IMG/VR virus record: IMGVR_UViG_3300010885_076238
Location: 124,001-188,000 of that record
Length of the DNA: 64,000 nucleotides
Strand: one strand, 5' to 3'
Numbering within the stretch: position 1 is the first letter of the stretch; every line of letters starts with the position of its first letter. Position numbers and translations under genes: made by a program. Positions 424-42,625 of this stretch are shown here, piece by piece. The notes under the pieces are model-generated. The model did no database searches, was not told where the DNA came from, and saw nothing but the letters and a program-made list of their open reading frames with translations.

Positions 424-671
424 ATTGGGAAGTTTTCGCTGACTTCCCATAGTTAAGCCTTCGGGTTAGGATCGCGGGTAATCCTTTAATTAACTGCCGT
501 AGAGTTTTTAGAAGTTTCTGTAAGACTGAAATCTTCTATTGTTGGTTGCACAAATTTTAATAAAGAATATACTAGGGCCATTTCTGTGATATACTTTACA
601 GAAGTGGCCTTAGTATTTCTTTAAACCAAGTAGGCATCTCCTGATGTTTATTTACTCAAGGAAGGGTAGGT

Positions 672-857
672 ATGTTTAGGAATGAGAAGATAGTTGTTTT
701 GGATATAGTTGATAGGTGTCTTAAGTTGGAGGATGATCGTGGTCAGATAATAAGTTTGATTTTTATTAAGGGTGGAAAATTAATAATTAAGGGTGAGTTG
801 AAAGTTTCAGATAGTTCGATAGAGGCTCCAGAGATTAATTACTTGGATAAAAAATAA
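672..857 (+). CDS. hypothetical protein
   Basis: 61-aa ORF with purine-rich RBS-like sequence. Confidence 0.55.
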   Translation: MFRNEKIVVLDIVDRCLKLEDDRGQIISLIFIKGGKLIIKGELKVSDSSIEAPEINYLDKK

Positions 858-894
858 AAATAATTATGTATCGTTATGGGGTAGGAGACAAAAA

Positions 895-1608
895 ATGGAA
901 AATACCCCTAAGAAGCCTACTGAAATTCTTCCTTATAGGGAAGAGGATTGGGCAGGCGTTAGCGTTCCTAAGTTTAGGGATGCGAGTCGTGCGTGGAAGT
1001 TTTTGAAGAAGCATGGTTTTTATCGGCTTCCTGAGAAAACTGAATTAGTATTTTTGAAGGATTTATCATTAGCGATAGATTATGCTGTTCGGGTAGGCAC
1101 TAGGTTGCCGGTTGTTTTTGAAACTGAGTTGAAGAAGCATCCTCAGTTGAGTTATGATTATATTTCTAGGGTGATTCAGGCGCCTTTGGAGGAATTTGAA
1201 GAAACTATTAGCAAGGTTCCTTCGTTGCTTGTGAAGTATAGTCATGAAATTTTAGAGGCGCCTTTGCCGGAGCATTTGGAAAATTGTTTGGCGGGTGATC
1301 CGTATAATTGTTTTGAATATGCGTGGCAGGTTCTTGACGGACGTTTGCCGGAAACTTTGCACAACTATATGTTTTGTGCTAACATGGACAATAACTTTGG
1401 ACGTAGGTATCGTGGTGGGTATCATACTAAGTTGAAGGGAGCAGAGGAATACAGTCCTGACTATGTTAGTCCAGAGACTTATTTTGAATTTATCAAGTGG
1501 CAAAGGAAAAATTTGCACAGGCAGATTCAGCATTATCAAAAAATTTATGGTGTTGAATCGAAGCAGACTGTTGGCGAATTTTTACATGAATTAGAGCATG
1601 GTCGTTAA
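895..1608 (+). CDS. helical-repeat phage protein (YAxxVxxGRLPE repeats)
   Basis: Promoter plus AGGAG RBS; internal repeats shared with 30496..31167. Confidence 0.75.
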   Translation: MENTPKKPTEILPYREEDWAGVSVPKFRDASRAWKFLKKHGFYRLPEKTELVFLKDLSLAIDYAVRVGTRLPVVFETELKKHPQLSYDYISRVIQAPLEEFEETISKVPSLLVKYSHEILEAPLPEHLENCLAGDPYNCFEYAWQVLDGRLPETLHNYMFCANMDNNFGRRYRGGYHTKLKGAEEYSPDYVSPETYFEFIKWQRKNLHRQIQHYQKIYGVESKQTVGEFLHELEHGR

Positions 1609-2029
1609 ATTATTTTTTACTGATGGGTCTAGTTCTATTCGATCTTTTTCGGATGAAGAATTAAGAGATTTAAAATTAAATAATAGTTTGAAAGATTATT
1701 TCTCAGAGCATTTGAGTCCAGATTTCCCTATTGACACCTTTGAAATATTTGATATAAAGAAGTGTCCGGTGGACAATGATTATAATTTACGGACATTCAA
1801 TTATCGGGATTATTTTAATTATTCTAAATCGTTTATAGGTTTAGAGATAGATGGTTGTGTAGTGGAGCGGGTGGAATTTTTTGACTATGATAGTTACGAG
1901 TATGGTTTGGATAGTTTGGATGGTGAGCCATACGAGCGTGGTGTAATTTTTAATTACACTATGGATCATTATTATTATTCAAAGGGAACAGTTGATCCAG
2001 AGAATTGGGAAAAAGATTCTAGAAAATAA
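1598..2029 (+). CDS. hypothetical protein
   Basis: 143-aa ORF overlapping the upstream stop. Confidence 0.65.
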   Translation: MVVKLFFTDGSSSIRSFSDEELRDLKLNNSLKDYFSEHLSPDFPIDTFEIFDIKKCPVDNDYNLRTFNYRDYFNYSKSFIGLEIDGCVVERVEFFDYDSYEYGLDSLDGEPYERGVIFNYTMDHYYYSKGTVDPENWEKDSRK

Positions 2030-2055
2030 AAATTAGTTCAAGTCGTTATGAGATT

Positions 2056-3375
2056 ATGGAGGACAAAATGACTACAGCCGTTTCTAAAATTACCGACGAT
2101 CAGTTTCGTCAGTTCAAAGATGATCTTGACACTATTATGTGCAAGTTTTCTATTGCTTTCCCGTTTTGGGGGGTGCTTGCGGAGCGTTGTAAGTTTAGTC
2201 TTACAAAGACTGCGGTTCCGACTGCTGGCATGACAGCGGATGGGCATTGTCTTTTCAACATTGATTTTGTTGAAGAATTGAAGAAGAAGTATCAGGACAA
2301 GTTCCATAAGAAGTTGTTATTCTTGACTGCCCATGAAATTAGTCATTTTGTTTTTGAACACATGAGTCGTCGTGAGGATCGTGACCCGTTGTTGTTCAAC
2401 GTGGCTGCGGACTTTGCTATCAACCTTCTCTTGCATTATCAGTTCGATAGGGACAAGGATTATTTTATCGAAGGTGGTTGTCTTGATGAAAAGTATAAGG
2501 ATTTGTGTGCGGAGCAAATCTACGAACTTCTCAAGAATGAAGATAAGGATGCTGGCGAAAAGGCTAAGAGTAAAATTATTGTAGATATTTTTGGTGACGG
2601 TGACAGCGAGGGTGAAGGTGACGGTGACGGCGAAGATGATAGCGAGGGTGATGGTGATGGCACTATGACCGTTCGTGAGCGTCGTGTTCCGTTGCCGTCT
2701 AAGGAGGGCAAGAGTAAGGAGATGAAGGCCAGTGAAATGGCCGATCATGTTCGTCGTGCCTTTACGGAAGCGTATGCTGTTGCGAAGTCTCAGGGTAAGT
2801 TGCCTGCCGACTTTGAGCGTGCTATTGTAAAGATTCTCAAGCCGAAGGTGGATTGGCTTCGTGCGTTGCGTAATAAGTTGCGATATGGTGTTTCACGTTT
2901 GGAAAAGCGTGATGTTACATGGAGTATTCCTAACAAGCGTTTTCTAGGTCGTGATTATATTCTTCCTAGTAACATTGGCCCTGAGTCGCCAAAGATTTGT
3001 TATGCCGTGGATACTTCGGGTAGCATGAGCCAGAAAGATTTGGAACAGGCTATGGGTGAGTTGGAAGATATTCGCCAAAGGTTCAATGCAAAGGTTTATG
3101 TTTTGGATTGTGATGCCGATGTTCATAGTAGTAAGTGGCTGAATCCGCATGAGCCTCTGCCGGTTCTCAATGGTGGTGGTGGAACGGATTTTCGTCCGGT
3201 GTTTGAGCATATTCAAGAAAATAGACTCAAGCCTGACTACGTTGTATTTTTTACTGACGGGTATGGTTCGTTCGGTGACGATCCCGGTCTGCCGGTGTTG
3301 TGGGTAATGACCAGCGACGTTGAGCCGCCTTTTGGCGAAACTGTTCGTGTCAATGTTCCGTTCGATGGCGATTGA
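2056..3375 (+). CDS. HExxH metallopeptidase-like plus vWA domain protein (DUF2201-type)
   Basis: HEISH motif, NVAADFAIN, MIDAS DTSGSM, GGGGTDF, FTDGYG. Confidence 0.9.
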   Translation: MEDKMTTAVSKITDDQFRQFKDDLDTIMCKFSIAFPFWGVLAERCKFSLTKTAVPTAGMTADGHCLFNIDFVEELKKKYQDKFHKKLLFLTAHEISHFVFEHMSRREDRDPLLFNVAADFAINLLLHYQFDRDKDYFIEGGCLDEKYKDLCAEQIYELLKNEDKDAGEKAKSKIIVDIFGDGDSEGEGDGDGEDDSEGDGDGTMTVRERRVPLPSKEGKSKEMKASEMADHVRRAFTEAYAVAKSQGKLPADFERAIVKILKPKVDWLRALRNKLRYGVSRLEKRDVTWSIPNKRFLGRDYILPSNIGPESPKICYAVDTSGSMSQKDLEQAMGELEDIRQRFNAKVYVLDCDADVHSSKWLNPHEPLPVLNGGGGTDFRPVFEHIQENRLKPDYVVFFTDGYGSFGDDPGLPVLWVMTSDVEPPFGETVRVNVPFDGD

Positions 3376-3407
3376 AAATAAAATTAATTACCAATCGTTA
3401 TAAGAAC

Positions 3408-3773
3408 ATGACCGTTGCCAAAACAAAGCGAAAACGCAATCTTCGTAAGTTGTGGGAGGACGTTACCGTAAATGGAAAGCGTCCTCCCACAAATGAGAAG
3501 GTTTGGTTTGACGATCCTCTAATTGCTTTTCTTTTTGCAAAATATAAAAAGGGCAAACCTTTTTCTGCGGAATTAGAAAAACTTTTTTATGGCAATGTGC
3601 AGGCAATTTATAATTATGTTTATTGGGTAGTTCACGATCTTGGTCTTGAGCGTCCCGAGCATCTTAATAATTATATGATTGCTAATAGTTTGTCTGCTTC
3701 TGATAAGGAGCAGGAGTGGATTGATCTTTACTTTGAAAAAATTGAAAATAAAAAAAATAGAGCTGTAAAATAA
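3408..3773 (+). CDS. hypothetical protein, leaderless start
   Basis: ATG 6 nt after CGTTAT; PEHLNNYM motif shared with 895..1608. Confidence 0.7.
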   Translation: MTVAKTKRKRNLRKLWEDVTVNGKRPPTNEKVWFDDPLIAFLFAKYKKGKPFSAELEKLFYGNVQAIYNYVYWVVHDLGLERPEHLNNYMIANSLSASDKEQEWIDLYFEKIENKKNRAVK

Positions 3774-3827
3774 TTTTAGATCTGGTTCGTTATCCCATTA
3801 GAACGACGGTAACAAAAAAACAAGGAG

Positions 3828-4913
3828 TTGATAAAGATGGCTGATAAATTGGTTTCTACTGCTAACGTGATTACGGGTTCATTGGTTGAGAAGATTCGTC
3901 GGTGTCGGCAGGTTCCTACTGCGAAGGGGCAGGGGTTGCCGATGTTCATTTTCGGTTCGCCGGGTGTGGGCAAGAGTGAGCAGGTGTTTCAGGCGTTGGA
4001 AGAAGGTGAGATGATGATTGACCTTCGCCTCAATAGTCTTGATAGCATTGACCTTCGTGGTCTGCCGGTTATCAAGAAGGATAAGGACAAGAATCCCACG
4101 CAGGTTGAGTGGGTGCGTCCAGAGTTTATCCCTGCTGACGGTAAGGGTATTCTGTTTCTTGACGAAATGAATACTGCGGCCCCCAGCGTTCAGAATCCGG
4201 CGTTGCAGTTGGTTCTTGACCGTAAGATTGGTTCGCATAAGTTGGGTGATGGTTGGTATATTGTCGCGGCTGGTAACAAGTCCGATGATAAGGCGCATGT
4301 TTACCCTCTGTCTGCGGCGTTGCGTCAAAGGTTTGCGATTTACCATTATCAGCCCGACCATAACACTTGGACGAATTGGGCCGTGAAGAATGGTGTTCAT
4401 CCTCACGTTATCGGATTCATCTCGTTCAAGCCCGACCTGTTGATTCAGCCGAGCGTTGACGAAGAATCTTCTAATCCTTCGCCACGTTCGTGGTACTATG
4501 TCTCTCAGAGACTCAATGCCGGTCAGAACGAGTTGGATGATATTCGTTCGGTTGTCGGTGCTGCTGCAAATGAGTTTATGGCATATCAGACGGTCTGTGA
4601 GAACATTCCGAAGATTGACGATATTCTTTCCGGCAAGATTGAATGGAAAGAGGACGAGCGTAATATCACGGTTAGTTATGCCGTGAGTAATGCACTCGCC
4701 ACGCACATGCTTCGCAGCAAGAGCGTCAAGGTTCAGATTGAAAACTGCTTCGGTGCGTTGAATAACATGAGTGGTGAACCGTCGATCCTGTTCATGCGTC
4801 GAGTCATGCACTCCGACAACACTGAACTCAAGACGGCACTGTTCTCTAGTGACAATGGTAAGAAGTGGTTCAAGAAGAACGGGGATCGTATGACTAAGGC
4901 GATCCAGATGTAA
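3828..4913 (+). CDS. MoxR-like AAA+ ATPase
   Basis: Walker A GSPGVGKS, Walker B LFLDE, AAGN, PSPRSW; next to a vWA gene. Confidence 0.92.
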   Translation: MIKMADKLVSTANVITGSLVEKIRRCRQVPTAKGQGLPMFIFGSPGVGKSEQVFQALEEGEMMIDLRLNSLDSIDLRGLPVIKKDKDKNPTQVEWVRPEFIPADGKGILFLDEMNTAAPSVQNPALQLVLDRKIGSHKLGDGWYIVAAGNKSDDKAHVYPLSAALRQRFAIYHYQPDHNTWTNWAVKNGVHPHVIGFISFKPDLLIQPSVDEESSNPSPRSWYYVSQRLNAGQNELDDIRSVVGAAANEFMAYQTVCENIPKIDDILSGKIEWKEDERNITVSYAVSNALATHMLRSKSVKVQIENCFGALNNMSGEPSILFMRRVMHSDNTELKTALFSSDNGKKWFKKNGDRMTKAIQM

Positions 4914-5020
4914 TAATGCCCGTCGTTCCCCCTCGCCTTGTGATGAAAGTCATGGGGCGAGGGGTTGGGCTTTAAAAATAAAAATTTATTAGAATCGTTA
5001 TAGAATTAAGGAGACAACAA

Positions 5021-5287
5021 ATGGCTTTGAATTTTGATGGTGATTATTCTGAAATTCCTGAGAATCTTCTTGGTGGCATCCTGCGATATGTCGAGTTTGC
5101 GGTTCAGCCTGGGGGTTTCTTGACCGCCGTGCTGAACAATGATCTCAGGCAAGCGGTTGGCAAGGCCGATCCTGCTTCGCTCAAGGCTCTACCGCTGGTG
5201 GTTCGATGGTTTGTCAATGAGCGTCCCGACCTTTACGGCCCTGAGAATTTCAAGAAGCACCTTGACCCTTTCCGAAAGGTTGTCTAA
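5021..5287 (+). CDS. hypothetical phage protein
   Basis: Promoter, AAGGAG RBS, PGGFLTAVLNNDL motif. Confidence 0.75.
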   Translation: MALNFDGDYSEIPENLLGGILRYVEFAVQPGGFLTAVLNNDLRQAVGKADPASLKALPLVVRWFVNERPDLYGPENFKKHLDPFRKVV

Positions 5288-5466
5288 TGCAAATTATTAC
5301 TTATCTTGTTCTTGGTGGAATCGGCACATATTTATTTATTGAAGCTGCTTGGTTTTGCTTTTGTATTACTTTCAAGGCCATTGATAATTTTATTAATGGC
5401 TGACAGTGAACACCTGATGTTTATTGTCTTAATTAAATAATAAATTATAATTCGCGTTATAACTTT

Positions 5467-5967
5467 ATGCAAAGTCAAACAATCAGCGGCATTGAAGATT
5501 ATCTCAAGTTCAGTTCGGACTTCCGCAAGAAGTGTAGGAAGCCAGAGGATTGGCGATACTGTTGCTTTGAAGAACTGGTGCTGAGTCACGGCAGGAAGTT
5601 CGATGAGATAGTTCGCAGGCCGAAGTGGGTAAAGCGAGGAGTAATCAAGGGATGTTTCTCTAATTGCTTTAGTGAAGTCGTCAAGCATCCAGACCGTCTG
5701 ATATATTGCGAAGGGTATGCTACGAGCTTAATCCCTGTGCATCACGCATGGCTCTTGTATGATGGCAAGGTTATTGATCCTACTTGGGATGGACGAGACA
5801 TCATCAAGGATAACACTGAATACTTTGGCATACCCTTTAATTATAATTATGTTCTAAAGGTTGCGACTGAATCTGGTTACTATGGAGTAATTGATAATTT
5901 TGCTCAAAGTTTTCCGTTGCTTAGTGGTGAGCATCAGAGTGATGAATTTCTAAGTAAAATAATTTAA
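5467..5967 (+). CDS. putative Cys-His-Asp (transglutaminase/papain-like) fold protein
   Basis: GCFSNC, YCEGYA, HHAWL, VIDPTW motifs; leaderless start. Confidence 0.6.
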   Translation: MQSQTISGIEDYLKFSSDFRKKCRKPEDWRYCCFEELVLSHGRKFDEIVRRPKWVKRGVIKGCFSNCFSEVVKHPDRLIYCEGYATSLIPVHHAWLLYDGKVIDPTWDGRDIIKDNTEYFGIPFNYNYVLKVATESGYYGVIDNFAQSFPLLSGEHQSDEFLSKII

Positions 5968-5988
5968 ATTCAAGAGCGTTATAGAATT

Positions 5989-6171
5989 ATGGAAAGCATT
6001 GCAGATAAAATTCTGGAAGATATTGCTAAGAAGAAACTTCTTCTTGAGACATTGCAGACTAGAGGTTCTGACGAGTTGGACTTCTCAGAGCAGTCTGTGT
6101 GGGCCATCAAGGATGCTTTGGAAGAGGCGTTTGATGCTGGCTTCAAGATGTGTAGGCAAGCCCGTGGTTAA
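5989..6171 (+). CDS. DUF6900-like small protein
   Basis: LQTRGSDELDF...VWAIKDALEEAF motif. Confidence 0.7.
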   Translation: MESIADKILEDIAKKKLLLETLQTRGSDELDFSEQSVWAIKDALEEAFDAGFKMCRQARG

Positions 6172-6721
6172 ATTAATTACTTATTTATTTGTTTTCTTTT
6201 TTGCCACAGAGGCTTTTGGCAATGATTTGTTTCGTTATTTAGCTGAGATGGTAAATGACGAGAGGCAGAAGGTGGGATTGTCTCGTCTTGTATATAACAA
6301 GCAATTAGAGCAAGCTGCGTTGTCTCATAGTCATTGGATGGCCCGTATTGGTAAGATGGAGCATTTGCAAGGTCAAAGTCCAAATAATTTTTTAGAATAT
6401 TTGAAGAGCGATCATAATCATGCTACTAGGATTATGAAGACTGGTTATTTAGATTGGCAAGATTTATTTGATAGGAACGGAGACAATGTTCGTTCAAAGC
6501 CTGATGCGGATGAGCATGTGAGTGAAATTATTGCTTACGCTGGGCCGGGGACGGGATTTATTCAGCATCAGCTTCCTGTTATTGTTCCGGGTTGGATGAG
6601 AAGTCCGGGGCATAAAGAGGCGATATTAAAAAATTATTGGAAAGATATTGGTGGTGCGTTTGCTGTTAGTAGAAACGGAAGTGTTTACTACTGCATTACT
6701 TTCGGGCAACCGGTGAATTAA
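6164..6721 (+). CDS. secreted CAP/SCP-domain protein
   Basis: GTG start with signal-like peptide; VNDER...GL, AALSHSHWM, WMRSPGHKEAIL. Confidence 0.8.
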   Translation: MVKLITYLFVFFFATEAFGNDLFRYLAEMVNDERQKVGLSRLVYNKQLEQAALSHSHWMARIGKMEHLQGQSPNNFLEYLKSDHNHATRIMKTGYLDWQDLFDRNGDNVRSKPDADEHVSEIIAYAGPGTGFIQHQLPVIVPGWMRSPGHKEAILKNYWKDIGGAFAVSRNGSVYYCITFGQPVN

Positions 6722-6723
6722 TT

Positions 6724-6942
6724 ATGGATAAAGAAGTTGTTGAGATAATGAGTACGGTTTGTCAAAAACTTTCTCATGCTAGAGTAAATTTATCTAAAAT
6801 ACTTGGGCCAGAGGATTACTCTAAATTTAGAGAAATTATTTTTGATTGTGAACAACTTATGGCGGCTTATTGTGATTGTGCGCCAATAAGGTTGATTGAT
6901 GGACAAGTAGAAGATATAATGTTAAATTACGAGACAAAATAA
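6724..6942 (+). CDS. hypothetical protein
   Basis: 72-aa ORF in operon. Confidence 0.6.
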   Translation: MDKEVVEIMSTVCQKLSHARVNLSKILGPEDYSKFREIIFDCEQLMAAYCDCAPIRLIDGQVEDIMLNYETK

Positions 6943-6982
6943 AAATAAATTAGGATCGTTATAGAATAGAACGAGACAACTT

Positions 6983-7055
6983 GCGGCTCTAGCTCAATTG
7001 GCAGAGCAAGGGGCTTTTAACCTCTAGGTTCAGGGTTCGATTCCCTGGGGCCGCA
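6983..7055 (+). tRNA. trnK: tRNA-Lys(UUU)
   Basis: Cloverleaf; AGGGG-CTTTTAA-CCTCT; GGTTCGATTCC. Confidence 0.95.
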
Positions 7056-7089
7056 CTTAATAAAAATTTATCAGACTCGTTATCATATT

Positions 7090-7157
7090 GCCGCAATGCT
7101 TGAAGGCGAACTTAGTTGGTTGAGCATTGAGCCTTCTTATAGTAACCAACCTGCGGC
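7090..7157 (+). ncRNA. candidate multi-pseudoknot small RNA or leader
   Basis: Four complementary segment pairs; starts at the predicted +1 of the promoter. Confidence 0.6.
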
Positions 7158-7178
7158 TTCTAATACAAAGGAATTTTT

Positions 7179-7331
7179 ATGAATGATTGGGAGAAGTATT
7201 ACAAGAAGAGTGGTGCGCCGGACAATCCTCCCCTGCCGGACATTCGTGTTCGTGGGATTCCAGCACGAAATGAACTTGAGAAGTTGCTCAAGAGTCGAGT
7301 GAGGATTGATCCTAAGAAGTTTATAAAATAA
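7179..7331 (+). CDS. 50-aa hypothetical protein (not in ORF track)
   Basis: AAGGA RBS; MNDWEKYYKKSGAPDN...KKFIK. Confidence 0.6.
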   Translation: MNDWEKYYKKSGAPDNPPLPDIRVRGIPARNELEKLLKSRVRIDPKKFIK

Positions 7332-7582
7332 TGTATTATGGATTTTACTCAAAATCTTCTGATGATCGTAATGGTCATGTGGTTTATCTAAATCCAGACG
7401 GCCAGAAAATAAAAGTTTCTTATGCCACCAAAGACCCACTTCTAGATTATTTTAAATTTAAGTGGGAAGATAAGGTTTTTGTTGGGCCTTTGATTAAGTT
7501 GGTTGAAATTAATTGGGCTTATGGTGGGGATTATAATAGTTTGAATATTGGCAAACCACCCAATAAAATAATAATTAAATAA
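7331..7582 (+). CDS. hypothetical protein
   Basis: TAATG coupling to upstream ORF. Confidence 0.6.
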   Translation: MYYGFYSKSSDDRNGHVVYLNPDGQKIKVSYATKDPLLDYFKFKWEDKVFVGPLIKLVEINWAYGGDYNSLNIGKPPNKIIIK

Positions 7583-7589
7583 GATCGTT

Positions 7590-9539: not shown

Positions 9540-9616
9540 TACAATATATGTAGTAATGAGTTTTCCAAAATAATAAAAAATCTTTTGAGTTATGGTTTAA
9601 AGAGAAAACGCATCGT

Positions 9617-10984: not shown

Positions 10985-10993
10985 AAATGGGGA

Positions 10994-34798: not shown

Positions 34799-34918
34799 TG
34801 CGAACGATGCCCCCTACCCGAAAGGGTAGGGGGGATTCATCGTAAAATTATTTTCGGTTTGATTCGTTATCTAGTATGGCCGCGATTGAGACGGCCAAGC
34901 CAATCGGGAGACCTAATC

Positions 34919-35107: not shown

Positions 35108-35237
35108 CGGGGGGCAGCCGCCCAACTCAACACCTAATGTTTATTGGCAAAGGTGAGCAATAAAAAATAAATTCCCAGCTAATTCGTTATCTAGTATGGC
35201 CGCGACAGTGACGGCCAAGCCAATCTAGGAAATAACG

Positions 35238-35579: not shown

Positions 35580-35635
35580 TTTTTTCGACTCTCATTCGTT
35601 ATACAAATGTAGCCACCACCCCAAGCAGGAAAAAA

Positions 35636-36389
35636 ATGACTATCACAGAAGTCATCACGCCCGGCCCAGGCGGATTCAAATTTCTCAACATGACGAACGA
35701 GAAGTTCGACTCGTTCACCGCAGACGAAATCATTGCCGCTGCGGAAGCGGCCGGTCTGTGGACATACTACGAACTGGACGACGACGGGAAGCTGACCGGC
35801 TTGGCGATCACCACGAAAGAAAGAGAGCCAAACGGATAGCGGGCTTTGGCCCAATGCTCTAACACCTAATGTTTATAATCAACAGTGAGTTGCTTGCCAA
35901 AACCAAAGGAGCCGGACATGGAAACTTTTGAGCAGTGGTGCAAGAGGATGCAAGAAGAACACGATCAATGGATTTCAAGTCCCGAAGGACAAATCTGGAT
36001 CAAGGGCTAAAAATTATTTTCGGTTTGATTCGTTATCAAGTATGGCCGATCATTCAACACCTAAGGAACAAGTCATGAAAGCCAAAGAAGTGCAGATTGG
36101 ACAGGAGTTCTACACCAACTACGCGAGCATGGAACACTGCAAGCCGCTGTCTAACGTTCATCGTTGGAAAATGATCGCTCCAGAGCATCGGTTGGCGCAG
36201 CTTGTGCTTGTCACCGGGGACGTTTGCGATCACACTCGCATCATCGATGAAAAGGAAGAAGTGTTCGCCACAGCCGGTGAAGCTTGGCAAGATTGTGCGA
36301 CTCAACTCAACGCGATCATCGAAAAGATTCGTGAAGCCGTCAAGGATTGCGAGTCCAAAGTTCCCCGCCAGTGCAAGGAATCCGCGTGA
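35636..36389 (+). other. two hypothetical CDS (35636-35839, 36075-36389)
   Basis: Promoter and RBS; starts shortened relative to the ORF track. Confidence 0.65.
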
Positions 36390-36448
36390 AAAAGGGGGCT
36401 TGGGAAACCAAGTCCCCAATAATTAACACCAAATGTCTATTATAGAGT

Positions 36449-36733
36449 ATGAGACTATTTATTGATGACATCAGAACTCCATCCGAAGACTACATCGTTC
36501 TCCGGTCTTCTGAGGATGCCATTCAATTCATAAAGCAAAATGGCTGGCCTGAGTTCATCAGTTTTGACCACGATCTTGGCGGCGACGATACCACTATGGT
36601 CTTTCTCAAAAGGCTTGTAAACGAAGTATGGGACGGCAAAACCATGCCGCCAGACTATATCGTTCATAGTGCCAACCCAATTGGATCGAAGAACATCGTG
36701 AGTTTCATGGAAAGCTGGAAGAAGTCAATCTAA
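36449..36733 (+). CDS. cyclic-phosphate-processing receiver-like domain protein
   Basis: LFIDDIR, ISFDHDLG, VHSANPIG. Confidence 0.8.
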   Translation: MRLFIDDIRTPSEDYIVLRSSEDAIQFIKQNGWPEFISFDHDLGGDDTTMVFLKRLVNEVWDGKTMPPDYIVHSANPIGSKNIVSFMESWKKSI

Positions 36734-36807
36734 AAAATTTTTTTTACTTTCATTCGTTATACCAATATGGCAGCAATTGAGACTGCCGGATTACTAGGAT
36801 TGCTCTA

Positions 36808-37037
36808 ATGTTTGGACTCGTTTCTATGATTTTGTTTAGCGTCGGAACTATTGGATTTTTCTACGTCACTAAGGAGGGCAACTAATGTTTATCGTAATTG
36901 AGCAGAAGGAAGACGGCACGACTCAGATTCTTTCGCCCGTAATCAACGACCAGAAAGAAGCAGAAGTAGAGGCTGCTTGGATTTCCCACCTGAACGGTTG
37001 GAGTTGCACAGTAAAGCAAGTGGATCAAGCCGCTTGA
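36808..37037 (+). other. two coupled mini-CDS (36808-36885, 25 aa hydrophobic; 36885-37037, 50 aa ending QAA)
   Basis: TAATG overlaps, AAGGAGG RBS. Confidence 0.6.
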
Positions 37038-37169
37038 AACAATCGGCAGTAAACCTGCCACCCAACCCAAAAGGTTGGGCCATTAGCAAATACCTAATGT
37101 TTATTGTTGAATCGAACCTGATAAAAATAATTTTCGATCTAGTTCGTTATAGATTTAGGAGGACGTTTT

Positions 37170-38589
37170 ATGACTAAGCCCGTTGAAATCTCAACCAAGG
37201 AAATGTGGGAACTCTCAGCAGTGGGAGCCTGCATTCTTCTAGCTGTTCAAGAGATGGAAGAAGATGCTGTCGGCAGGCAAAAGGTGATCGAAGCGGGAAA
37301 CCGTTTGTTCGATCTCATGGGCAAAATTGGAGAACGAGATGATTGGTCATCCAGAAGCCCAAAAGGAGAGGAAAAAGTATGAAAAAAACTGTCGGAGCAA
37401 CCAAGGCTCACGCATCATGCGGATATTGCAAACACTTGCGCAAGTTCGGAAAGCGACTTGCCAATAAGGCTTCTCGCAAACACGGAAATAATTTTCGATT
37501 CAATGCGTTATCAAATATAGAGAATCCCAACCCCGGAGAATAATCATGTTCAAGAAGAAAACCGATGGTCGATTCCGTGTCGAGCTGAAGTATAAGAACG
37601 GCAGCGAAGCATTCATGGTCAGCAACGACTACCAGCAAATCTGCCGCCTGTACGAGCTTGCCAGAACTCCCATTTGCGAAAATTTCACACAGTCGATCTA
37701 CGAAGTGATCTTGTTCGACGGCGATAAGCCCCTTGCAAACTGGACTAACTCAGCCGCATTAGTCAAAGTGGCTTGACAATCCTAGGCGATTCTGGGTAGG
37801 GCCGGTCTCATGAGCCGGATTGGGTAGCACCCCCCGCGTGGTTCGATTCCACGACTCGCCATTTAGAATGCGGTAAAATGCAACAAGGAGCAAACCATGA
37901 ATACTGAATTTTATGTGGGCGAACACCGTGGTATCTGGGTAGGCCCAGTCATCCGAAATAAACAGACGAATCATCCTGTGGCATTCGTCGCAGCCGGATC
38001 AGAACACTTTTCCGAAATATTATCCCTAGCACCAGAAATGCTTGAAGCACTACGGAAAATCAGGAATAACTCAGACAACGCGGAAGTCAACAAAATCGCA
38101 TCAGAAATCCTACTCAAGGCAACCAAACACGCCTAATCGTCAACACCTAATGTTTATTTCCCGAACGGGACAATTCAGACAAAAATCAGGCAATTTATAA
38201 TAATTATTCCCGCTCGGGAAAGTTAGGTAATCTGTGCAAGCCCATAAAAGAAAATAAAAAATCCAAGGCCCGATTGACGATAGATAAGGTACGGGACAGA
38301 AAACCATTCAAAGGAGTGAATCATGTTGGCTTGGATCGGAATCGCAATAACCGCCGTTGGAATGATTTTTAGTAGCTATGAGTTCGTGAAAAAAAATCCA
38401 GAACTCTTGCCCAAAGTTCAAAACGTACAACTGCTGGCCCATCGTCAACGTCAATCAGCGTTCATGTACAGTCAAGTAAATTTGGCCTATGATGTTGTGA
38501 ACGGAAAACATTGGTTTCAACACCCAGACGGTCAGTGGAGAGAATTCCCACCAAAACCCTCTCAAGTCGATATGCAAAACAGCCGATAA
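37170..38589 (+). other. small CDS (37170-37382, 37379-37543, 37546-37776, 37897-38136, 38323-38589)
   Basis: RBS-supported ORFs. Confidence 0.6.
37785..37861 (+). tRNA. D-arm-less tRNA-like gene, CAU anticodon
   Basis: CCGGT-CTCATGA-GCCGG; CGTGG-TTCGATT-CCACG; GGCGATT/ACTCGCC. Confidence 0.65.
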
Positions 38590-39213
38590 ATAAAATAAGG
38601 AAAGGAATCCAAAATGAAAAAAATCAACTGGAACCAAATCGTCAACGCTCTTATTCTTGTCAAAATAGGACAAGACTTAGGAACCAACTCGCAACTTACC
38701 CAATCCATCCATCATATCATCGACGTTATTGCTACGTTCGCTAATGCCTTTGTAAGAATATAAAATAATTTCTCGATCAGTTCGTTATACAATAGTGGCC
38801 GTCCCATTCTCAGGAGAGCAAACATGAACACTGACACCAACTGGACTTACGAGCGCGAGGGAGCCAAAGAGATGATCGCAAGGCTCGAAGAAGAAATTCA
38901 GAATTCGACCTCCAAGCAGGATCGAATCAACAAACAGGAAGAAATACAAAGACTCCAATCGTAAAGAGTCAAAAAATAATTTTCAATCCCGTTCGTTATA
39001 CAATAGTGGTCAACTAAAGGTGCTGACTGAAAGTGACACACGGCGGACAAGGTGGCCGACCGCAGGATCAGCACCACTCTAAAGGATCAAAAATGTATCT
39101 GACTCTCAATGATTGGATGATGCTCGTTGGACTGATTTCTTTCGCAGGATTCTGTTCCTACACTGCCCACGAAATTCAAGGTGCAATCCACAACTACTTA
39201 CATGGAGAATATA

Positions 39214-39558
39214 ATGATTTTTGAAGTTGAAATGCTCGCGTTCGGAAAACCAGGAGAAGTTCGCAAGGTCAATGTTCCCGATGAGGCTCTAACTCGCGCA
39301 AAAGAAGATACAGACAATATTCTTGAAGCCGCGTTTTATTACGGCCAAAACGATTTCCAGCCGCAAAACCACCCGTCAGTAAGTGCTGGCGATGTGATCC
39401 GCTGGAAAGAAGAAAACTATCTGGTTGCTGGTATGGGTTTCAAAAAGCTGACCGATGAACAACTAAATGATTATCGATCTCTCGACCAAAACGATAAGTT
39501 CATCGGAAGATGCCAAATTGAAATAGGCGAACCAGTAGTAGGACGCAGAAACAAGTAA
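39214..39558 (+). CDS. YodL-like protein
   Basis: HPSVSAGDVI...YLVAGMGFKKL. Confidence 0.65.
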   Translation: MIFEVEMLAFGKPGEVRKVNVPDEALTRAKEDTDNILEAAFYYGQNDFQPQNHPSVSAGDVIRWKEENYLVAGMGFKKLTDEQLNDYRSLDQNDKFIGRCQIEIGEPVVGRRNK

Positions 39559-39753
39559 CCTGCACAATTCCATCAAACCATCAAAGCCCTAATAAATAAT
39601 AAATATCGCTTACGAAAGTGATATTTATAGGGCTTTATCTAACACCTAATGTTTATAAAACATCGCTAGTCGAAAAAAATAATTTTCGATCCAGTGCGTT
39701 ATGCCAATGTGGGCAGCAATTGAGACTGCCCCCGTTTTCAGGAGGTTTGAATC

Positions 39754-39963
39754 ATGGGTGACGAAGATTCCTTTCTCGATTCGCGTTGGGAAGAAATTTG
39801 CGAGTATGAAGACTCGTACGAGCAAGAGGATTGCTTCGATGACTTCGACGATGAAGATGATGAATACGATTGCTTCAGCGAAGACGACAACGACGACTTT
39901 GAAGACGACTTCGCTGACGACAACTACGACGACTACGACGACTTCTACGAGGAAGCCGCGTGA
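39754..39963 (+). CDS. extremely acidic 69-aa protein
   Basis: AGGAGG RBS; D/E with F/Y spacing. Confidence 0.75.
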   Translation: MGDEDSFLDSRWEEICEYEDSYEQEDCFDDFDDEDDEYDCFSEDDNDDFEDDFADDNYDDYDDFYEEAA

Positions 39964-40108
39964 AAATAGGGGGCTTGGGAAACCAAGCTTCCCCCAACTA
40001 TCAACACCTAATGTTTATAATGCCAACCCGCCGGAAACTTCTCGAAGAAAAATAATTTTCCATTCAAATCGTTATAAATCATCGGCCCAAAACCCTGAGG
40101 ATCAAATC

Positions 40109-40654
40109 ATGAGCTACGAAAACGCCCCCGCCACCATCATGCTCGCGACCCACTGCTGCTGCTGCGGTCGCCCACTGGTCGATGCTATCTCTGTTGAGAT
40201 GGGTATCGGCCCCGATTGCCGTCAAGGTCGCACCGATGGCATTTCCAAAGAACAGCAAGAAATCTGCAACAAACTCACCCATGCCGCCGCTCTTGCCGCG
40301 CAGGAAGGTCAAGTCGAGAAGGTTCGCGCGATTGCCGCCGAAATTGCCGCTCTAGGTCTGACTGAATTGGCCGATAAGGTTCAGCACCGTTTCGTCAACG
40401 CTGAAAGATTGGCAAAGATCAATATCATTCAGACCGGCGACCGTCTGACCGTTACAACCCCGTGGAAACGTAGCAGCGACTTTGTTGCCGCATGGAGAAC
40501 CATTCCCGGCAGACGATATGGCGGGGCCGGTAAGAACATCATCCCCCTTAGCAGCAAGGGTGAGTTGTGGAATCTGCTACAGAAGTTCTTCCCCGGCCAA
40601 TTCGGCAAGGGGCCAAAGGGACTGTTCAGAGTCCCTAAGAACGAGGCGGCTTGA
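40109..40654 (+). CDS. DUF6011-like zinc-finger protein
   Basis: CCCCGRPLVDAISVEMGIGPDC. Confidence 0.8.
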   Translation: MSYENAPATIMLATHCCCCGRPLVDAISVEMGIGPDCRQGRTDGISKEQQEICNKLTHAAALAAQEGQVEKVRAIAAEIAALGLTELADKVQHRFVNAERLAKINIIQTGDRLTVTTPWKRSSDFVAAWRTIPGRRYGGAGKNIIPLSSKGELWNLLQKFFPGQFGKGPKGLFRVPKNEAA

Positions 40655-40836
40655 CTGCCTGCACAAATTATATGCCCCCGAAATCCAAATGGAGAGTAGG
40701 GGTCGCGTTATACAGAAAAAACTTTAGAAATAAATATTAATACCTAATGTTTATTTTTATTCGCGCCGGTAGCCGGTAGCCGGTCGAGTTCGCCGGTAGT
40801 AAAAAAATAATTTCCGATCCGGTTCGTTATACCAAT

Positions 40837-41169
40837 ATGGCCGCGATTGAGACGGCCAGCCAATCGGGAGGATGGGACATGGCGACTTGGATCAACGGCG
40901 ACCCGGTGAATGTTGTTGCAGGCATGATCAGGAGCCGCTGGTTGCTTCTGCCCGCAACTTGGTTTGAATCAGGCATGGGCGTCAAAGTGGACGACGAACG
41001 CAAATTCGTCCATGTGATCGACCGACGCGGAAAGCCCGTGGGCAATCCCATAAAGTTTTGGGATGATGCTCCGGCCGGTGGCGGATCAAAAGAAGATGCC
41101 ATCAACGAGTGCAAAGCATTCGGAGAGACATACGCACAAATTTTCCGCCCCCGAAATCCACAAGGATAG
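40837..41169 (+). CDS. hypothetical protein (start 40837 or 40879)
   Basis: Promoter, hairpin, GGAGG. Confidence 0.65.
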   Translation: MAAIETASQSGGWDMATWINGDPVNVVAGMIRSRWLLLPATWFESGMGVKVDDERKFVHVIDRRGKPVGNPIKFWDDAPAGGGSKEDAINECKAFGETYAQIFRPRNPQG

Positions 41170-41325
41170 TAGGGGTCGCGTTATACAGAAACGGCAGAAA
41201 ATATTTGGCCTGCCACTTAACACCTAACGTTTATTTTTGATGGTGGGCAGCAAAAAATAATTTTCGGTTTGGTGCGTTATCTAGTATGGCCGCAATTGAG
41301 ACGGCCAGCCAATCGGGAGCTTGTC

Positions 41326-41520
41326 ATGATCGCCATCGTCATCGTCACCGCCGCGTACGTCGCTTTCGGCATCGCGGGGTACTCGTACGTCAACCGTTGG
41401 ATTTGCCACGGCCTTGACGACGGCAATGAGTCTGGAACTGGCCTGTCGTGCTTGCACATTCTCAACCCCATCATGGTGGCGGTTGGAGCGAGAATAATGC
41501 TCGACAAGCTGTCCTCCTAG
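41326..41520 (+). CDS. small membrane protein, copy 2
   Basis: Duplicate of 34919..35107. Confidence 0.75.
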   Translation: MIAIVIVTAAYVAFGIAGYSYVNRWICHGLDDGNESGTGLSCLHILNPIMVAVGARIMLDKLSS

Positions 41521-41654
41521 CGGAGGGCAGCCGCCCAACCAAACACCTAATGTTTATAAGTGAGCGAACGCGCGGCTCCCGAATAATTTTCAATTTCATT
41601 CGTTATCCAGTATCGCCGCACTTGTGACGGCAGGCCGACCATAGGAACCAACCC

Positions 41655-41960
41655 ATGACCACCACTCGCGAAACGCTTCTGGCCGAGTTTGCCTCCGTCT
41701 ACAGCCGCACAGGCTGGAGGGTCGCCGCTTCTCTCGACGGCATGACCGTGGATCAGTTGCAGACCACGCTCGACGGTCTGTACGAAGCCATCAGTGAGGA
41801 AAGGGAAAAGATGGACGCTTGGTTCGCAAGACAGAACGAGGATGCTGAAATGTCTGCCCGTGAGTGGGAGCAGTTGCAGGCAAAAGCCGATGCTGAGGCT
41901 GCTGCCGAAGCTGAGTGGTCGAAGTGGCAACACCACTACGACAGGCTGGTAGGGGTGTGA
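41655..41960 (+). CDS. hypothetical helical protein
   Basis: Promoter, hairpin, RBS. Confidence 0.7.
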   Translation: MTTTRETLLAEFASVYSRTGWRVAASLDGMTVDQLQTTLDGLYEAISEEREKMDAWFARQNEDAEMSAREWEQLQAKADAEAAAEAEWSKWQHHYDRLVGV

Positions 41961-42089
41961 CCCGCCTCATATCGAAACACCTAATGTTTATAATGGGCCT
42001 GAGTTAGCCGAAAATAATCCGCCCACCCAACCGTTATCAGTGTAGCGACCGCATATGTGACGGTCTCGCCTACCCTTGGAGTTCCTGCC

Positions 42090-42518
42090 ATGTACACCAC
42101 TCCCTCCTTCGTGAAGAACGTTCTCCCCGCTGGCAAGATCCCCGGCATGGAAGCCCACTACAGCGATCTGTCCGACTTGAGCATCACCATCCCCTTCGCA
42201 CTCATGGGATGGGACGATGGCCTCGACTGTGGCTACCAAGACTCCCCGCCCACTGATTACGTTGTAGGGGCTTTCGAGAATCGTGATGAGGCTGAGGATC
42301 AGCTTGCTTCCTGTGTGCAAAACAACCCAGCCGGTATCTATTGGATCGTGGAGAGCTATCAGGAGCCGCTGTACAGCTTCAATAGCGTCAGCTGGGACGG
42401 AATCAATAGGGATGCCTATCTGTCCATGTCGCTCACCCGCGAGGATGTCATACGCCTTGAGAGCAGGCTGGTAAGGGAGAAGACCCAGAGCGACCATACA
42501 GTTGTGCGACTGGCCTAA
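42090..42518 (+). CDS. hypothetical protein
   Basis: Last promoter-plus-hairpin module; GGAG RBS. Confidence 0.7.
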   Translation: MYTTPSFVKNVLPAGKIPGMEAHYSDLSDLSITIPFALMGWDDGLDCGYQDSPPTDYVVGAFENRDEAEDQLASCVQNNPAGIYWIVESYQEPLYSFNSVSWDGINRDAYLSMSLTREDVIRLESRLVREKTQSDHTVVRLA

Positions 42519-42625
42519 TGCACAGCACGACTGCACAGAACCAAGGCATCCTGCTGCCAGAACGGCAAGCAGGGCCGCAATCAAACACCTACGGTCTATT
42601 ATATAATCGAACACCCAATGTTTAT

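What the first reader, a model, noticed from the sequence alone, without database searches (positions are those of the whole stretch)
548..42625. Bipartite, strictly oriented DNA element: GCACA box 78-93 bp upstream of AACACCTRATGTTTAT, with a density gradient toward 42.6 kb
Seen: about 27 copies of a 16-bp element, all on the plus strand, nearly always between a gene end and the next promoter. Its core is an inverted repeat with an asymmetric spacer, (A)AACA-CCTRA-TGTT(T). In 17 copies a GCACA (often GCACAAATT) starts a near-fixed distance upstream: 548>636 (88), 5324>5409 (85), 12880>12968 (88), 22651>22738 (87), 24399>24489 (90), 28427>28511 (84), 29828>29920 (92), 31454>31547 (93), 32455>32535 (80), 33582>33664 (82), 35041>35129 (88), 37006>37089 (83), 39562>39641 (79), 40661>40739 (78), 41134>41219 (85), 41454>41542 (88), 42520>42610 (90). 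The filler differs between sites (AT tracts, hairpins, coding ends, even a whole tRNA-Leu), so length rather than sequence is conserved. The four GTCTAT variants lack the box at that distance. Spacing falls from 5-7 kb to 0.3-0.7 kb, then the element vanishes. Inference: a site for a large protein complex spanning or looping about 8 helical turns, acting in genome ejection or organisation, polar termination or repression (stoperator-like), or directional recombination. I know of no described element with this geometry.
Basis: partly seen in the sequence, partly recalled or inferred. Interest (0 to 1): 0.9.

Follow-up and report, generated by a model that had tools for sequence, protein, structure and literature searches.

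The report
Conserved three-part phage transcription punctuation signal
A 44-kb block of small genes in an uncultured 204-kb freshwater phage is punctuated by a GCACA box, a variable spacer of about 87 bases, a 16-base box and a previously unnoticed core promoter, an arrangement conserved in related giant phages and most likely a set of gene-expression control sites with an unusual geometry.

Summary
There are 27 copies of the 16-mer (box2), all on the + strand against 0.11 expected. 18 of the 23 + strand GCACA (box1) in 1-42625 lie 77-93 nt upstream of a box2.

Relatives with 78-87% identical helicase keep box1 at 74-97 nt although box2 itself has diverged. The shared box2 core is CCTRAYRTTTAT. 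Over 39 sites in five sequences the distance is 87.1 +/- 5.8, far tighter than its parts, but it shows no helical periodicity.

It has 60 + strand copies before almost every gene and tRNA, and is probably the core promoter. Box2 always lies upstream of B, at distances clustering at 50-54, 60-64, 70-73, 83-84 and 91. The periodicity peaks at 10.5 bp (p about 0.001).

Best reading: box2 is a DNA site for a lineage-specific phage transcription factor acting on the B promoter from the same helix face. Box1 plus the spacer forms an upstream boundary or insulator.

Rivals are a second promoter class and a stoperator-like polar stop. No experiment or transcript map is available, so the mechanism is inferred.

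The parts
548..651 (+). unit 1: box1 548, spacer with long AT-rich hairpin, box2 636 (2 mismatches); no B, SD+ATG at 672
   Evidence: d=88; upstream fold z=-8.9
5324..5424 (+). unit 2: box1 inside ORF 3' end, box2 5409, B ends at +51
   Evidence: d=85
8610..8625 (+). box2 alone, degenerate (2 mismatches), no B nearby, SD+ATG about 9 nt after
12880..12983 (+). unit 3: box1 starts 2 nt after tRNA-Arg(tct), box2 12968, B ends +60
   Evidence: d=88; same tRNA-Arg/box1 junction in L124 and L125
17915..17930 (+). box2 alone after a hairpin, B ends +52
19944..19959 (+). box2 alone, B ends +70
22651..22753 (+). unit 4 downstream of SNF2 helicase gene; box2 22738; next B far (+176)
   Evidence: d=87; ortholog in L126 keeps both boxes, spacer unalignable, d=97
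24399..24504 (+). unit 5, two hairpins in spacer, B ends +83
   Evidence: d=90; ortholog in L126 d=90 with diverged spacer
26067..26082 (+). box2 alone, GTCTAT variant, 5 nt after a stop codon, B ends +64
26329..26344 (+). box2 alone, GTCTAT variant, no B, ATG 4 nt after
28427..28526 (+). unit 6, B ends +64
   Evidence: d=84
29828..29935 (+). unit 7: spacer is tRNA-Leu(caa) 29834-29917; box2 has 2 mismatches; B ends +64
   Evidence: d=92; not so in L126
31454..31562 (+). unit 8, B ends +60
   Evidence: d=93
32455..32550 (+). unit 9, GC-rich 13-bp-stem hairpin; a conserved ~60-nt insert lies between box2 and B (+138)
   Evidence: d=80; one compensatory pair change versus L126
33582..33679 (+). 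unit 10, box1 inside coding sequence, conserved in L126
   Evidence: d=82, L126 d=83
35041..35144 (+). unit 11, box1 64 nt before the stop codon (paralog of unit 16), B ends +61
   Evidence: d=88
35861..35876 (+). box2 alone, perfect consensus, overlaps upstream stop codon, no B, ATG at +57: unexplained by the regulator model
36425..36440 (+). box2 alone, degenerate (2 mismatches), no B, ATG 8 nt after
37006..37104 (+). unit 12, box1 overlaps the stop codon, B ends +61
   Evidence: d=83
38142..38222 (+). box2 alone followed by a sigma-70-like promoter (TTCAGA-16-TATAAT, -10 ends at +60) flanked by two TTCCCGnnCGGGAA palindromes
   Evidence: same layout in L125 near 8187
39562..39656 (+). unit 13, 54-nt hairpin, B ends +61
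   Evidence: d=79
40003..40018 (+). box2 alone after GC-rich hairpin, B ends +72
40661..40754 (+). unit 14, B ends +91
   Evidence: d=78
41134..41234 (+). unit 15 (spacer paralogous to unit 14), B ends +61
   Evidence: d=85
41454..41557 (+). unit 16, box1 in coding sequence, B ends +64
   Evidence: d=88
41976..41991 (+). box2 alone, B ends +61
42520..42625 (+). last unit at the module end: two GCACA (42520, 42533), a 3-mismatch box2 copy at 42584-42599 and box2 at 42610; followed by AT-rich non-coding DNA
   Evidence: d=90 and 77; sequence read
851..42037 (+). array of 60 copies of element B (AAAATAA, 12-14 nt, CGTTRT), the putative core promoter, 15-45 nt before start codons and 8-34 nt before tRNA genes
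   Evidence: 2 copies on the - strand; continues upstream to at least contig 81 kb
24584..41302 (+). 11 exact copies of a 5'UTR hairpin with loop GCRATTGAGAC just downstream of B promoters
   Evidence: also present in L124 and L125

Best explanation
The repeated unit is a transcription-control cassette of the phage's accessory-gene module. It has three DNA parts.

1. B is the core promoter used before most genes.
2. Box2 (the 16-mer) is an asymmetric binding site for a phage-encoded, lineage-specific transcription factor or polymerase accessory subunit. It sits on the same face of the helix as B, roughly 50, 60, 70, 80 or 90 bp upstream of the start point, and activates or represses that promoter.
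3. Box1 (GCACAA, often GCACAAATT) with the structured spacer lies at the end of the preceding gene or tRNA. It acts as the upstream boundary that ends or processes incoming transcripts before they reach the regulated promoter.

Shown: the elements, their orientation, their spacings, and their conservation across relatives.

Inferred: that B is a promoter, that box2 binds a protein, and that box1 with the spacer insulates. Why box1 must sit 74-97 nt from box2 is not explained.
For: - Box2 is contiguous, asymmetric, always intergenic and co-oriented with the genes.
- In every intergenic region that holds both elements, box2 lies upstream of B. This holds in the window and in L124, L125 and L126.
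- The distance from box2 start to B end clusters at 50-54, 60-64, 70-73, 83-84 and 91 in 36 sites of five sequences (the window, its upstream flank L117, and L124-L126). The Rayleigh statistic peaks at 10.5 bp with R 0.61. None of 5000 simulations reached it. Using unique values per genome gives p 0.001.
- At 38142, which has no B, a sigma-70-like promoter has its -10 end at +60, the modal distance.
- Box2 sites with no promoter downstream are mostly degenerate: 636, 8610, 26329 and 36425.
- The 5' half of box2 differs between lineages while its 3' TTTAT is kept. B changes in parallel, from CGTTAT to CGTATA. This is what co-evolving protein and site would give.
- B precedes ORFs and tRNA genes at short fixed distances and has a two-block layout with a fixed gap.
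- Box1 sits at gene ends and 2-5 nt after tRNA-Arg in three phages.
- Spacers fold significantly better than shuffles in about two thirds of sites.
- Box1 never occurs in this form without box2 downstream.
Against: - No transcript ends, no protein and no binding data exist.
- The start point of B is assumed to be about 7 nt after CGTTAT.
- Box2 at 35861 is a perfect copy with SD+ATG at +57 and no promoter at the expected place.
- The last box2, at 42610, has no gene to control.
- Sites within a genome are partly related by duplication, which inflates the periodicity statistic, although the intervening sequences differ.
- 43 of the 60 B promoters work without box2, so the factor is not general.
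- The box1-box2 ruler has no helical phase, so it is not part of the same rigid complex and remains unexplained.
- GCACA is not avoided inside genes: 7 observed against 10.2 +/- 2.7. This argues against GCACA being a strong autonomous stop or cleavage signal.
- No polymerase, sigma factor or clear DNA-binding regulator was identified in the ~124 kb of the contig that was read.
Confidence: 0.4

Rival explanations
1. Box2 is itself a promoter of a second temporal class, read by a phage-specific polymerase or sigma factor. B is the other class, so many genes have tandem promoters. Box1 with the hairpin is the terminator of the preceding unit.
For: - A contiguous 16-21 nt motif with sharp edges, about 28 co-oriented copies and a lineage-specific 5' part. 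This is what T7-group, phiKZ and AR9 early promoters look like.
- AR9 has genes with both an early and a late promoter in front (PMC5312081).
- Some genes have only box2 between a strong hairpin and their SD+ATG: 636/672, 35861, and L124:17210.
- The 3' end of box2 resembles the downstream block of B in each lineage: GTTTAT and CGTTAT in the window, TTTATCC and TTTATGG in L127.
- Tandem copies next to an AT-rich stretch at the module end recall the T7 primary origin (own knowledge).
Against: - Tandem promoters need no helical phasing, yet box2 and B are phased.
- The genes that depend on box2 alone mostly have degenerate copies.
- Box2 is never found between B and the gene.
- No polymerase gene was found in the part of the genome read.
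Confidence: 0.25
2. Box2 is a polar stop site: either a stoperator-like site for a DNA-binding protein that halts elongating polymerase, or a factor-dependent sequence-specific terminator. Box1 is an upstream auxiliary signal in the nascent RNA, and termination is completed about 80 nt later.
For: - About 28 asymmetric sites lie in short intergenic spaces and are oriented with transcription, as for cluster A mycobacteriophage stoperators (PMC9283540).
- Box2 always lies after gene or tRNA ends, usually after a hairpin, and before the next promoter.
- Degenerate copies occur where the next gene has no promoter of its own, which fits leaky stops.
- There are two copies at the module end.
- An unphased but length-limited distance fits a measure taken along RNA rather than DNA.
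Against: - A stop site needs no helical phasing with the next promoter.
- The gap between hairpin and box2 varies from 0 to 52 nt, so they do not form one intrinsic terminator.
- A canonical hairpin plus T-run still follows the last box2 about 100 nt downstream.
- Hairpin-then-B junctions exist without box2: 5001, 17591, 25253, 33369 and 34870.
- There is no sign that the phage is temperate.
- GCACA is not avoided inside genes.
Confidence: 0.15
3. The unit acts on DNA outside transcription. Candidates are a strand-specific nick, priming or single-strand initiation signal on the lagging-strand template, or a pair of recombination sites bounding mobile spacers (attC-like or miniature element).
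For: - Strict single-strand orientation.
- A hairpin-forming, non-conserved filler of constrained length.
- Mean spacing about 1.6 kb.
- A strong positive GC skew that starts at the first unit.
- Gene cassettes differ between the window and L126.
Against: - Box1 and box2 are neither inverted repeats nor complementary (read).
- The spacers are unrelated to one another except for orthologs and paralogs.
- The position of the hairpin inside the spacer floats.
- The elements avoid coding sequence and track gene boundaries and promoters.
- Cassette breakpoints lie at the B and 5'UTR-hairpin repeats, not at box1 or box2.
Confidence: 0.07

Closest known systems
PeSL / PmSL composite promoter-terminator motifs of T4-type phages (PMC2839356, PMC4122927)
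   Same: Both are repeated intergenic cassettes made of a stem-loop plus a promoter. Both are concentrated in plastic regions full of small ORFans. Both differ slightly between related phages and flank gene gains and losses, here between the window and L126.
   Different: PeSL promoters are host sigma-70 or MotA type, and the stem-loop sequence is itself conserved. Here the stem-loop is not conserved. Two extra conserved boxes flank it at a fixed distance, and the promoters are non-canonical.
Stoperators of cluster A mycobacteriophages (PMC9283540)
   Same: More than twenty asymmetric sites per genome, in short intergenic spaces, with orientation tied to the direction of transcription and sequence varying between lineages.
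   Different: Stoperators are 13-bp single sites of a temperate phage's immunity repressor and are spread over the whole genome. They have no partner box 87 nt upstream and no reported phasing with a downstream promoter. No repressor is identified here and no lysogeny genes were seen.
Upstream activator sites phased with a core promoter (CAP class I sites at -61.5, -71.5, -82.5, -92.5; phi29 p4 at -82; P2 Ogr at -55) - from own knowledge
   Same: A protein site upstream of a core promoter at distances that differ by whole helical turns, as seen for box2 and B.
   Different: Those sites are dyad-symmetric and bind dimers. Box2 is asymmetric and strictly oriented. The factor and the start point are unknown.
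Two promoter classes of giant phages with their own polymerases (AR9, phiKZ; PMC5312081)
   Same: Tens of copies of a highly conserved motif in front of early genes, with some genes carrying two promoter types in tandem.
   Different: The AR9 and phiKZ motifs are different sequences and have no box 87 nt upstream. No multisubunit polymerase genes were found here in the part of the genome read.
Poxvirus early termination signal (U5NU acting 20-50 nt upstream of the release point, with an SNF2-family ATPase) - from own knowledge
   Same: A short signal that acts at a distance measured along the transcript, which would give an unphased but length-limited spacing. The module encodes an SNF2-family helicase.
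   Different: This is a pure analogy. Different organisms, a different sequence, a longer distance, no evidence that GCACA is read in RNA, and GCACA is not avoided within genes.

Membership tests
Stoperator system (cluster A mycobacteriophages) | More than 20 asymmetric sites, in short intergenic spaces, oriented with transcription | tested here: met
   27 + 1 sites, all + strand, all intergenic or at gene boundaries
Stoperator system (cluster A mycobacteriophages) | Sites bound by a monomeric immunity repressor of a temperate phage; one site overlaps the early lytic promoter | not testable with these tools
   No repressor, integrase or other lysogeny gene was recognised in the ~124 kb read. 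Binding cannot be tested.
Stoperator system (cluster A mycobacteriophages) | Sites distributed across the genome | tested here: not met
   Box2 is confined to contig 122.5-166.6 kb and absent from the other ~80 kb examined
PeSL promoter-stem-loop cassettes | Conserved stem-loop followed by a host-type early (or MotA middle) promoter | tested here: not met
   Spacer hairpins are unrelated in sequence. Sigma-70-type sites are barely above shuffles (40 against 26 +/- 5) and do not coincide with the boxes.
PeSL promoter-stem-loop cassettes | Located in plastic regions and flanking gene insertions, deletions and replacements between close relatives | tested here: met
   The window and L126 are collinear with cassette indels. 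The L126-specific segment 5907-6248 is flanked by repeats of B plus the 5'UTR hairpin.
T7-group single-subunit polymerase promoters | Contiguous motif of about 17-23 bp, one orientation, lineage-specific specificity region, AT-rich 3' end at the start point | tested here: inconclusive
   The shape fits: 16-21 nt, ending in TTTAT. No start points are known and there is no sequence similarity to the T7, T3 or SP6 consensus (own knowledge).
T7-group single-subunit polymerase promoters | Genome encodes a T7-like RNA polymerase | tested here: inconclusive
   No Pfam or PHROG polymerase hit among the large ORFs of contig 80-204 kb. Contig 1-80 kb was not read.
Intrinsic (hairpin plus U-run) terminators | GC-rich stem directly followed by a T-run | tested here: not met
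   The scan finds 22 sites against 21.8 expected, and only one (32524-32543) involves box2. The hairpin-to-box2 gap is 0-52 nt.
Integron attC sites | Terminal core sites that are inverse complements of each other and pair in a folded single strand; variable length 57-141 | tested here: not met
   The length range is compatible, but GCACAAATT and box2 are not complementary and match neither RYYYAAC nor GTTRRRY (read)
N4-type hairpin promoters / structured RNA element in box2 | Stem maintained by compensatory change | tested here: not met
   Variants at positions 2, 3, 10 and 13 are not compensated. No inverted repeat in the L124 version.
Any Rfam family | Match at gathering threshold over the unit | tested here: not met
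   Only the tRNAs, the tmRNA and a group I intron were found. Nothing matched the box1-box2 units apart from tRNA-Leu.
Phased upstream regulator site of a core promoter | Distances to the core promoter differ by whole helical turns | tested here: met
   Clusters at 50-54, 60-64, 70-73, 83-84 and 91; peak at 10.5 bp; p about 0.001 in the conservative test
Phased upstream regulator site of a core promoter | A protein binds the site and changes promoter activity | not testable with these tools
   Needs binding and reporter assays

The most novel reading that the evidence does not exclude
Box1 and box2 form a two-signal device in which length is measured along the transcript or by a flexible machine: a distance-setting terminator or insulator coupled to a regulated promoter. 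It is used throughout a widespread family of uncultured jumbo and mega phages (contigs of 157-620 kb) whose transcription apparatus matches no described polymerase or sigma family. This would be a new kind of transcription punctuation in bacterial viruses.
Probability: 0.2. Interest if true: 0.8.

Novelty: new variant of a known kind. Interest (0 to 1): 0.6.

Why it matters
It gives a first handle on how a large, widespread and entirely uncharacterised family of freshwater giant phages organises gene expression. The handle consists of a probable core promoter, a probable regulator site phased with it, and a conserved boundary box with a length rule that no current model explains.

The motifs allow transcription units to be annotated in these genomes. 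They also predict a co-evolving DNA-binding factor that could be found by covariation. The repeated cassettes explain how the accessory-gene module gains and loses genes.

If the box1-box2 ruler proves to be read along RNA, it would be a bacterial-virus counterpart of signal-at-a-distance termination.

Tried and rejected
- Hairpin or dyad in box2: variants are not compensatory and the dyad is absent in L124.
- Hammerhead-like CUGAUGA in box2: broken by the A variants and by L124.
- Pairing between box1 and box2, or attC-like ends: none.
- GCACA avoidance in the sense strand. It looks depleted against base composition (5 background copies against about 34) but not against synonymous-codon shuffles (7 against 10.2 +/- 2.7).
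- Box1 as a -35 hexamer with a -10 in the spacer: no consistent spacing.
- Sigma-54-like reading of box1: the downstream TTGC is missing.
- Hairpin anchored to either box: the gaps vary with sd 14-16 nt.
- Common descent of the spacers: only orthologs and paralogs are alike.
- A-tract phasing in the spacers: weak peaks at multiples of about 6, with too few counts to use.
- Crude scan for hairpins exclusive to box2: too noisy, and hairpin-then-B junctions without box2 exist.
- Canonical promoters and terminators: not enriched at the units.
- Close relatives in the phage database: none by DNA, only distant helicase matches.
- Same-population contigs are 99.99-100% identical and gave no comparison.
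- Walking the contig from 80 to 204 kb for a polymerase, sigma factor or repressor: Pfam and PHROGs recognise almost nothing.
- Phasing of box1 with B: none. This was checked by hand on 12 sums, not run as a tool call.

Full report
**What the window is.** The window is bases 124001-188000 of a 204,311-bp viral contig from a freshwater-lake metagenome: IMGVR_UViG_3300010885_076238, equal to Ga0133913_10000027. Identical copies occur in three other samples.
- All genes from 1 to about 50 kb are on the + strand.
- There are 5 tRNA genes in that part, and a tRNA cluster with a tmRNA on the - strand at 59-63 kb.
- Recognisable proteins are few: DUF2201, an AAA_5 ATPase, VWA, an SNF2 helicase, DUF932 and DUF6011.
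- Nothing similar exists in the phage database at the DNA level.
- G+C is 35-54% up to 42.6 kb and about 31% after it.

- The 16-mer, called box2 here, has 27 copies with up to 2 mismatches, all on the + strand, against 0.11 expected.
- GCACA, called box1, occurs 23 times on the + strand of 1-42625. 18 of these lie 77-93 nt upstream of a box2, covering 17 of the 27 sites. The probability is about 4e-23 even at the composition-expected rate.
- The seven exact + strand GCACAAATT copies are all in that position.
- Six boxes lie inside the 3' end of an ORF, up to 64 nt before the stop. The distance is therefore kept relative to box2 and not to the gene end.
- The spacing gradient is real, but it follows the number of promoters and genes per interval, 3-5 falling to 1.
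- Box2 stops at 42625 and is absent from the following 30 kb. One more full unit lies 1.5 kb upstream of the window, where GC skew jumps from about 0 to +0.4.

**A third element was missed.** Downstream of most box2 copies, and before nearly every other gene and tRNA gene, lies element B: AAAATAA, a gap of 12-14 nt, then CGTTRT.
- The strict form has 26 copies against 0.09 expected.
- The relaxed form has 60 unique + strand copies between 851 and 42037, and 2 on the - strand.
- B ends 15-45 nt before start codons and 8-34 nt before tRNA genes.
- It continues upstream to at least contig position 81 kb, where box2 is absent.

I read B as the core promoter of this part of the genome. That is an inference from position and form.

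Eleven B promoters are followed by a 5'UTR hairpin with the loop GCRATTGAGAC. Canonical sigma-70 promoters and intrinsic terminators are not enriched.

**Conservation in relatives.** The SNF2 helicase has hundreds of relatives on contigs of up to 620 kb. Five loci were fetched.

| Locus | Helicase identity | Box2 form | B form |
|---|---|---|---|
| L126 | 87% | same as the window | same as the window |
| L124 | 78% | TACAACCTAACATTTATCCTA | ..GAATCGTATA |
| L125 | 78% | CATCATCCTGATATTTATCT | ..GAATCGTATA |
| L127 | 65% | TTGACCTTTATCC | AGTAGTTTATGGTAAG |

In the fifth locus, L128 (55% identity), only an abundant B-like motif and two intergenic GCACAA copies were seen, and no box2 analog was established.
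- In all four loci in the table, GCACAA (often GCACAAATT) is unchanged and lies 74-97 nt upstream of the diverged box2.
- The shared core of box2 is CCTRAYRTTTAT. The AACA/TGTT inverted repeat of the window is not conserved.
- In orthologous junctions of the window and L126 both boxes are intact while the spacer is diverged beyond alignment or replaced. One hairpin shows a compensatory pair change.
- tRNA-Arg is followed by box1 within 2-5 nt in three phages.
- The tRNA-Leu filler is peculiar to the window.

**Geometry.**
- Over 39 units in five sequences (the window, its upstream flank L117, and L124-L126), the box1-box2 distance is 87.1 +/- 5.8.
- The 5' gap, the hairpin length and the 3' gap each vary with sd 14-16. 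The total length is therefore constrained directly, whatever fills it: an AT-rich hairpin, a coding end with a GC-rich hairpin, or a tRNA.
- The spacers are unrelated to one another apart from orthologs and paralogs.
- The box1-box2 distances show no helical periodicity (R 0.15-0.21, p 0.2-0.4).
- In contrast, the distance from box2 to the end of B falls into classes 50-54, 60-64, 70-73, 83-84 and 91. The periodicity peaks at exactly 10.5 bp (R 0.61). None of 5000 simulations reached this value, and counting each value once per genome gives p 0.001.
- Box2 is always upstream of B, never between B and the gene.
- At 38142, where B is missing, a sigma-70-like promoter flanked by two palindromes has its -10 end at +60, the modal distance.

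**Choosing between models.**
- *Regulator site.* Helical phasing with B is what a protein bound at box2 and touching the polymerase at B would give. If transcription starts a few bases after CGTTAT, box2 is centred near -50, -60, -70, -80 or -90. Neither a tandem promoter nor a stop site requires phasing. Box2 copies that have no promoter downstream are mostly degenerate (636, 8610, 26329, 36425), as expected for sites that have lost their partner.
- *What this model leaves unexplained.* The perfect copy at 35861 is followed directly by SD+ATG, and the last copy at 42610 has no gene. Some hairpin-then-box2-then-gene junctions lack any other promoter.
- *Second promoter class.* For those reasons this reading stays credible. 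Its form resembles the promoters of phage-specific polymerases, and AR9 shows that two classes can sit in tandem (PMC5312081).
- *Stoperator-like or factor-dependent stop.* This fits the orientation, the position after gene ends and the double copy at the module end (PMC9283540). It does not explain the phasing. In addition, an ordinary hairpin plus T-run still follows the last box2.

**Box1.** Box1 only occurs with box2 downstream, sits at gene or tRNA ends, and is invariant where box2 and B have changed. Its reader is therefore either conserved or a host component. It is easier to reconcile with a measure taken along the transcript or by a flexible machine.

GCACA is not avoided within genes once codon usage is accounted for, so it is not a strong autonomous signal. 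I treat box1 plus the structured spacer as the upstream boundary of the regulated promoter. I regard the cause of the length rule as unexplained.

**Comparison with known systems.**
- The nearest described things are the PeSL promoter-terminator cassettes of T4-type phages. These also sit in plastic regions and flank gene shuffling (PMC4122927). Here, cassette indels between the window and L126 are flanked by repeats of B plus the 5'UTR hairpin.
- Also close are stoperators, the dual promoter classes of giant phages, and phased upstream activator sites.
- None of these has a conserved partner box at a fixed, unphased distance across a non-conserved spacer.
- Tests for intrinsic terminators, attC sites, N4-type hairpins and Rfam families were negative.

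**Limits.**
- There is no transcript map, no protein and no host.
- Only about 124 kb of the 204-kb contig was read. Almost none of its proteins match Pfam or PHROGs, so the polymerase and any regulator remain unidentified.
- Sites within a genome are not fully independent.

**Verdict.** The feature is real and conserved, and is a new variant of phage transcription-control cassettes. The mechanism is inferred with moderate confidence.

Noticed in passing
window 851-42037 (+), and contig 81-124 kb via L129, L130, L132: Element B (AAAATAA, 12-14 nt, CGTTRT) lies before almost every gene and tRNA: 60 copies in the window. Lineage-specific versions occur in relatives (GAATCGTATA; AGTAGTTTATGGTAAG; CCGCCACGCC-N9-GTCCTA in the 53% G+C relative L128). 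It is a probable non-canonical core promoter.
   Followed up: partly
window 24584-41302 (+), 11 sites: A conserved 5'UTR hairpin, GGCMGC-RATTGAGA-CKGCC, lies right after B promoters and is also present in L124 and L125. It may be a site for an RNA-binding regulator or an antitermination-type element.
   Followed up: no
window 8840-9015 (+): Rfam group I intron match (57.6 bits, above gathering), directly downstream of a B promoter and between two short ORFs.
   Followed up: no
window 59421-63063 (-): A cluster of eight tRNA genes and a tmRNA (tag GTNSYAMAA). Rfam also reports a 136-nt tRNA match at 60220-60355, possibly an intron-containing tRNA that ARAGORN did not call.
   Followed up: no
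window 1-42625: GGACC and GGTCC are completely absent (0 against about 20 and 12 expected) and CCWGG is about threefold depleted. This looks like avoidance of restriction sites.
   Followed up: no
window 38158-38222 (+); L125 about 8203-8290: Two TTCCCGnnCGGGAA palindromes flank a sigma-70-like promoter (TTCAGA-16-TATAAT) just after box2. The layout is conserved in a 78% relative and looks like a repressor-controlled promoter.
   Followed up: partly
window 17322-17560 and 26675-26915 (+): Two long non-coding stretches fold very stably (-100.8 and -81.1 kcal/mol over the 279- and 261-nt stretches folded, 17322-17600 and 26655-26915). The second lies directly behind a B promoter. Both are candidate structured RNAs.
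   Followed up: no
window 42626-42910: An AT-rich non-coding boundary lies between the mosaic-G+C module and the 31% G+C part. It has repeated ATTTTACAAAA-like motifs and a hairpin plus T-run near 42700-42745. It may be an origin or a module boundary.
   Followed up: no
window 34844-35144 and 41254-41557; 32573-32704 and 33708-33838: Internal paralogous repeats (87% and 86% identity). The first pair includes a small gene with its box1-box2 unit. The second is a conserved ~130-nt element inserted between box2 and B.
   Followed up: no
window 29716-29724 (-): The only exact GCACAAATT on the - strand, about 110 nt upstream of the box1 that precedes tRNA-Leu. Together they form an inverted pair.
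   Followed up: no
L124:6579-6625 (-): One inverted copy of the L124 box2 followed by a B-like block. It is preceded on its strand by a hairpin and T-run, and points antisense into a 78-aa gene whose product looks to me, by eye, like a small DNA-binding protein.
   Followed up: partly
L117:~6000 / L129:16001 (contig about 122.4 kb); window 1-10000: GC skew jumps from about 0 to +0.4 exactly where the first box1-box2 unit lies, then decays to about 0 by 40 kb, although gene orientation does not change.
   Followed up: no
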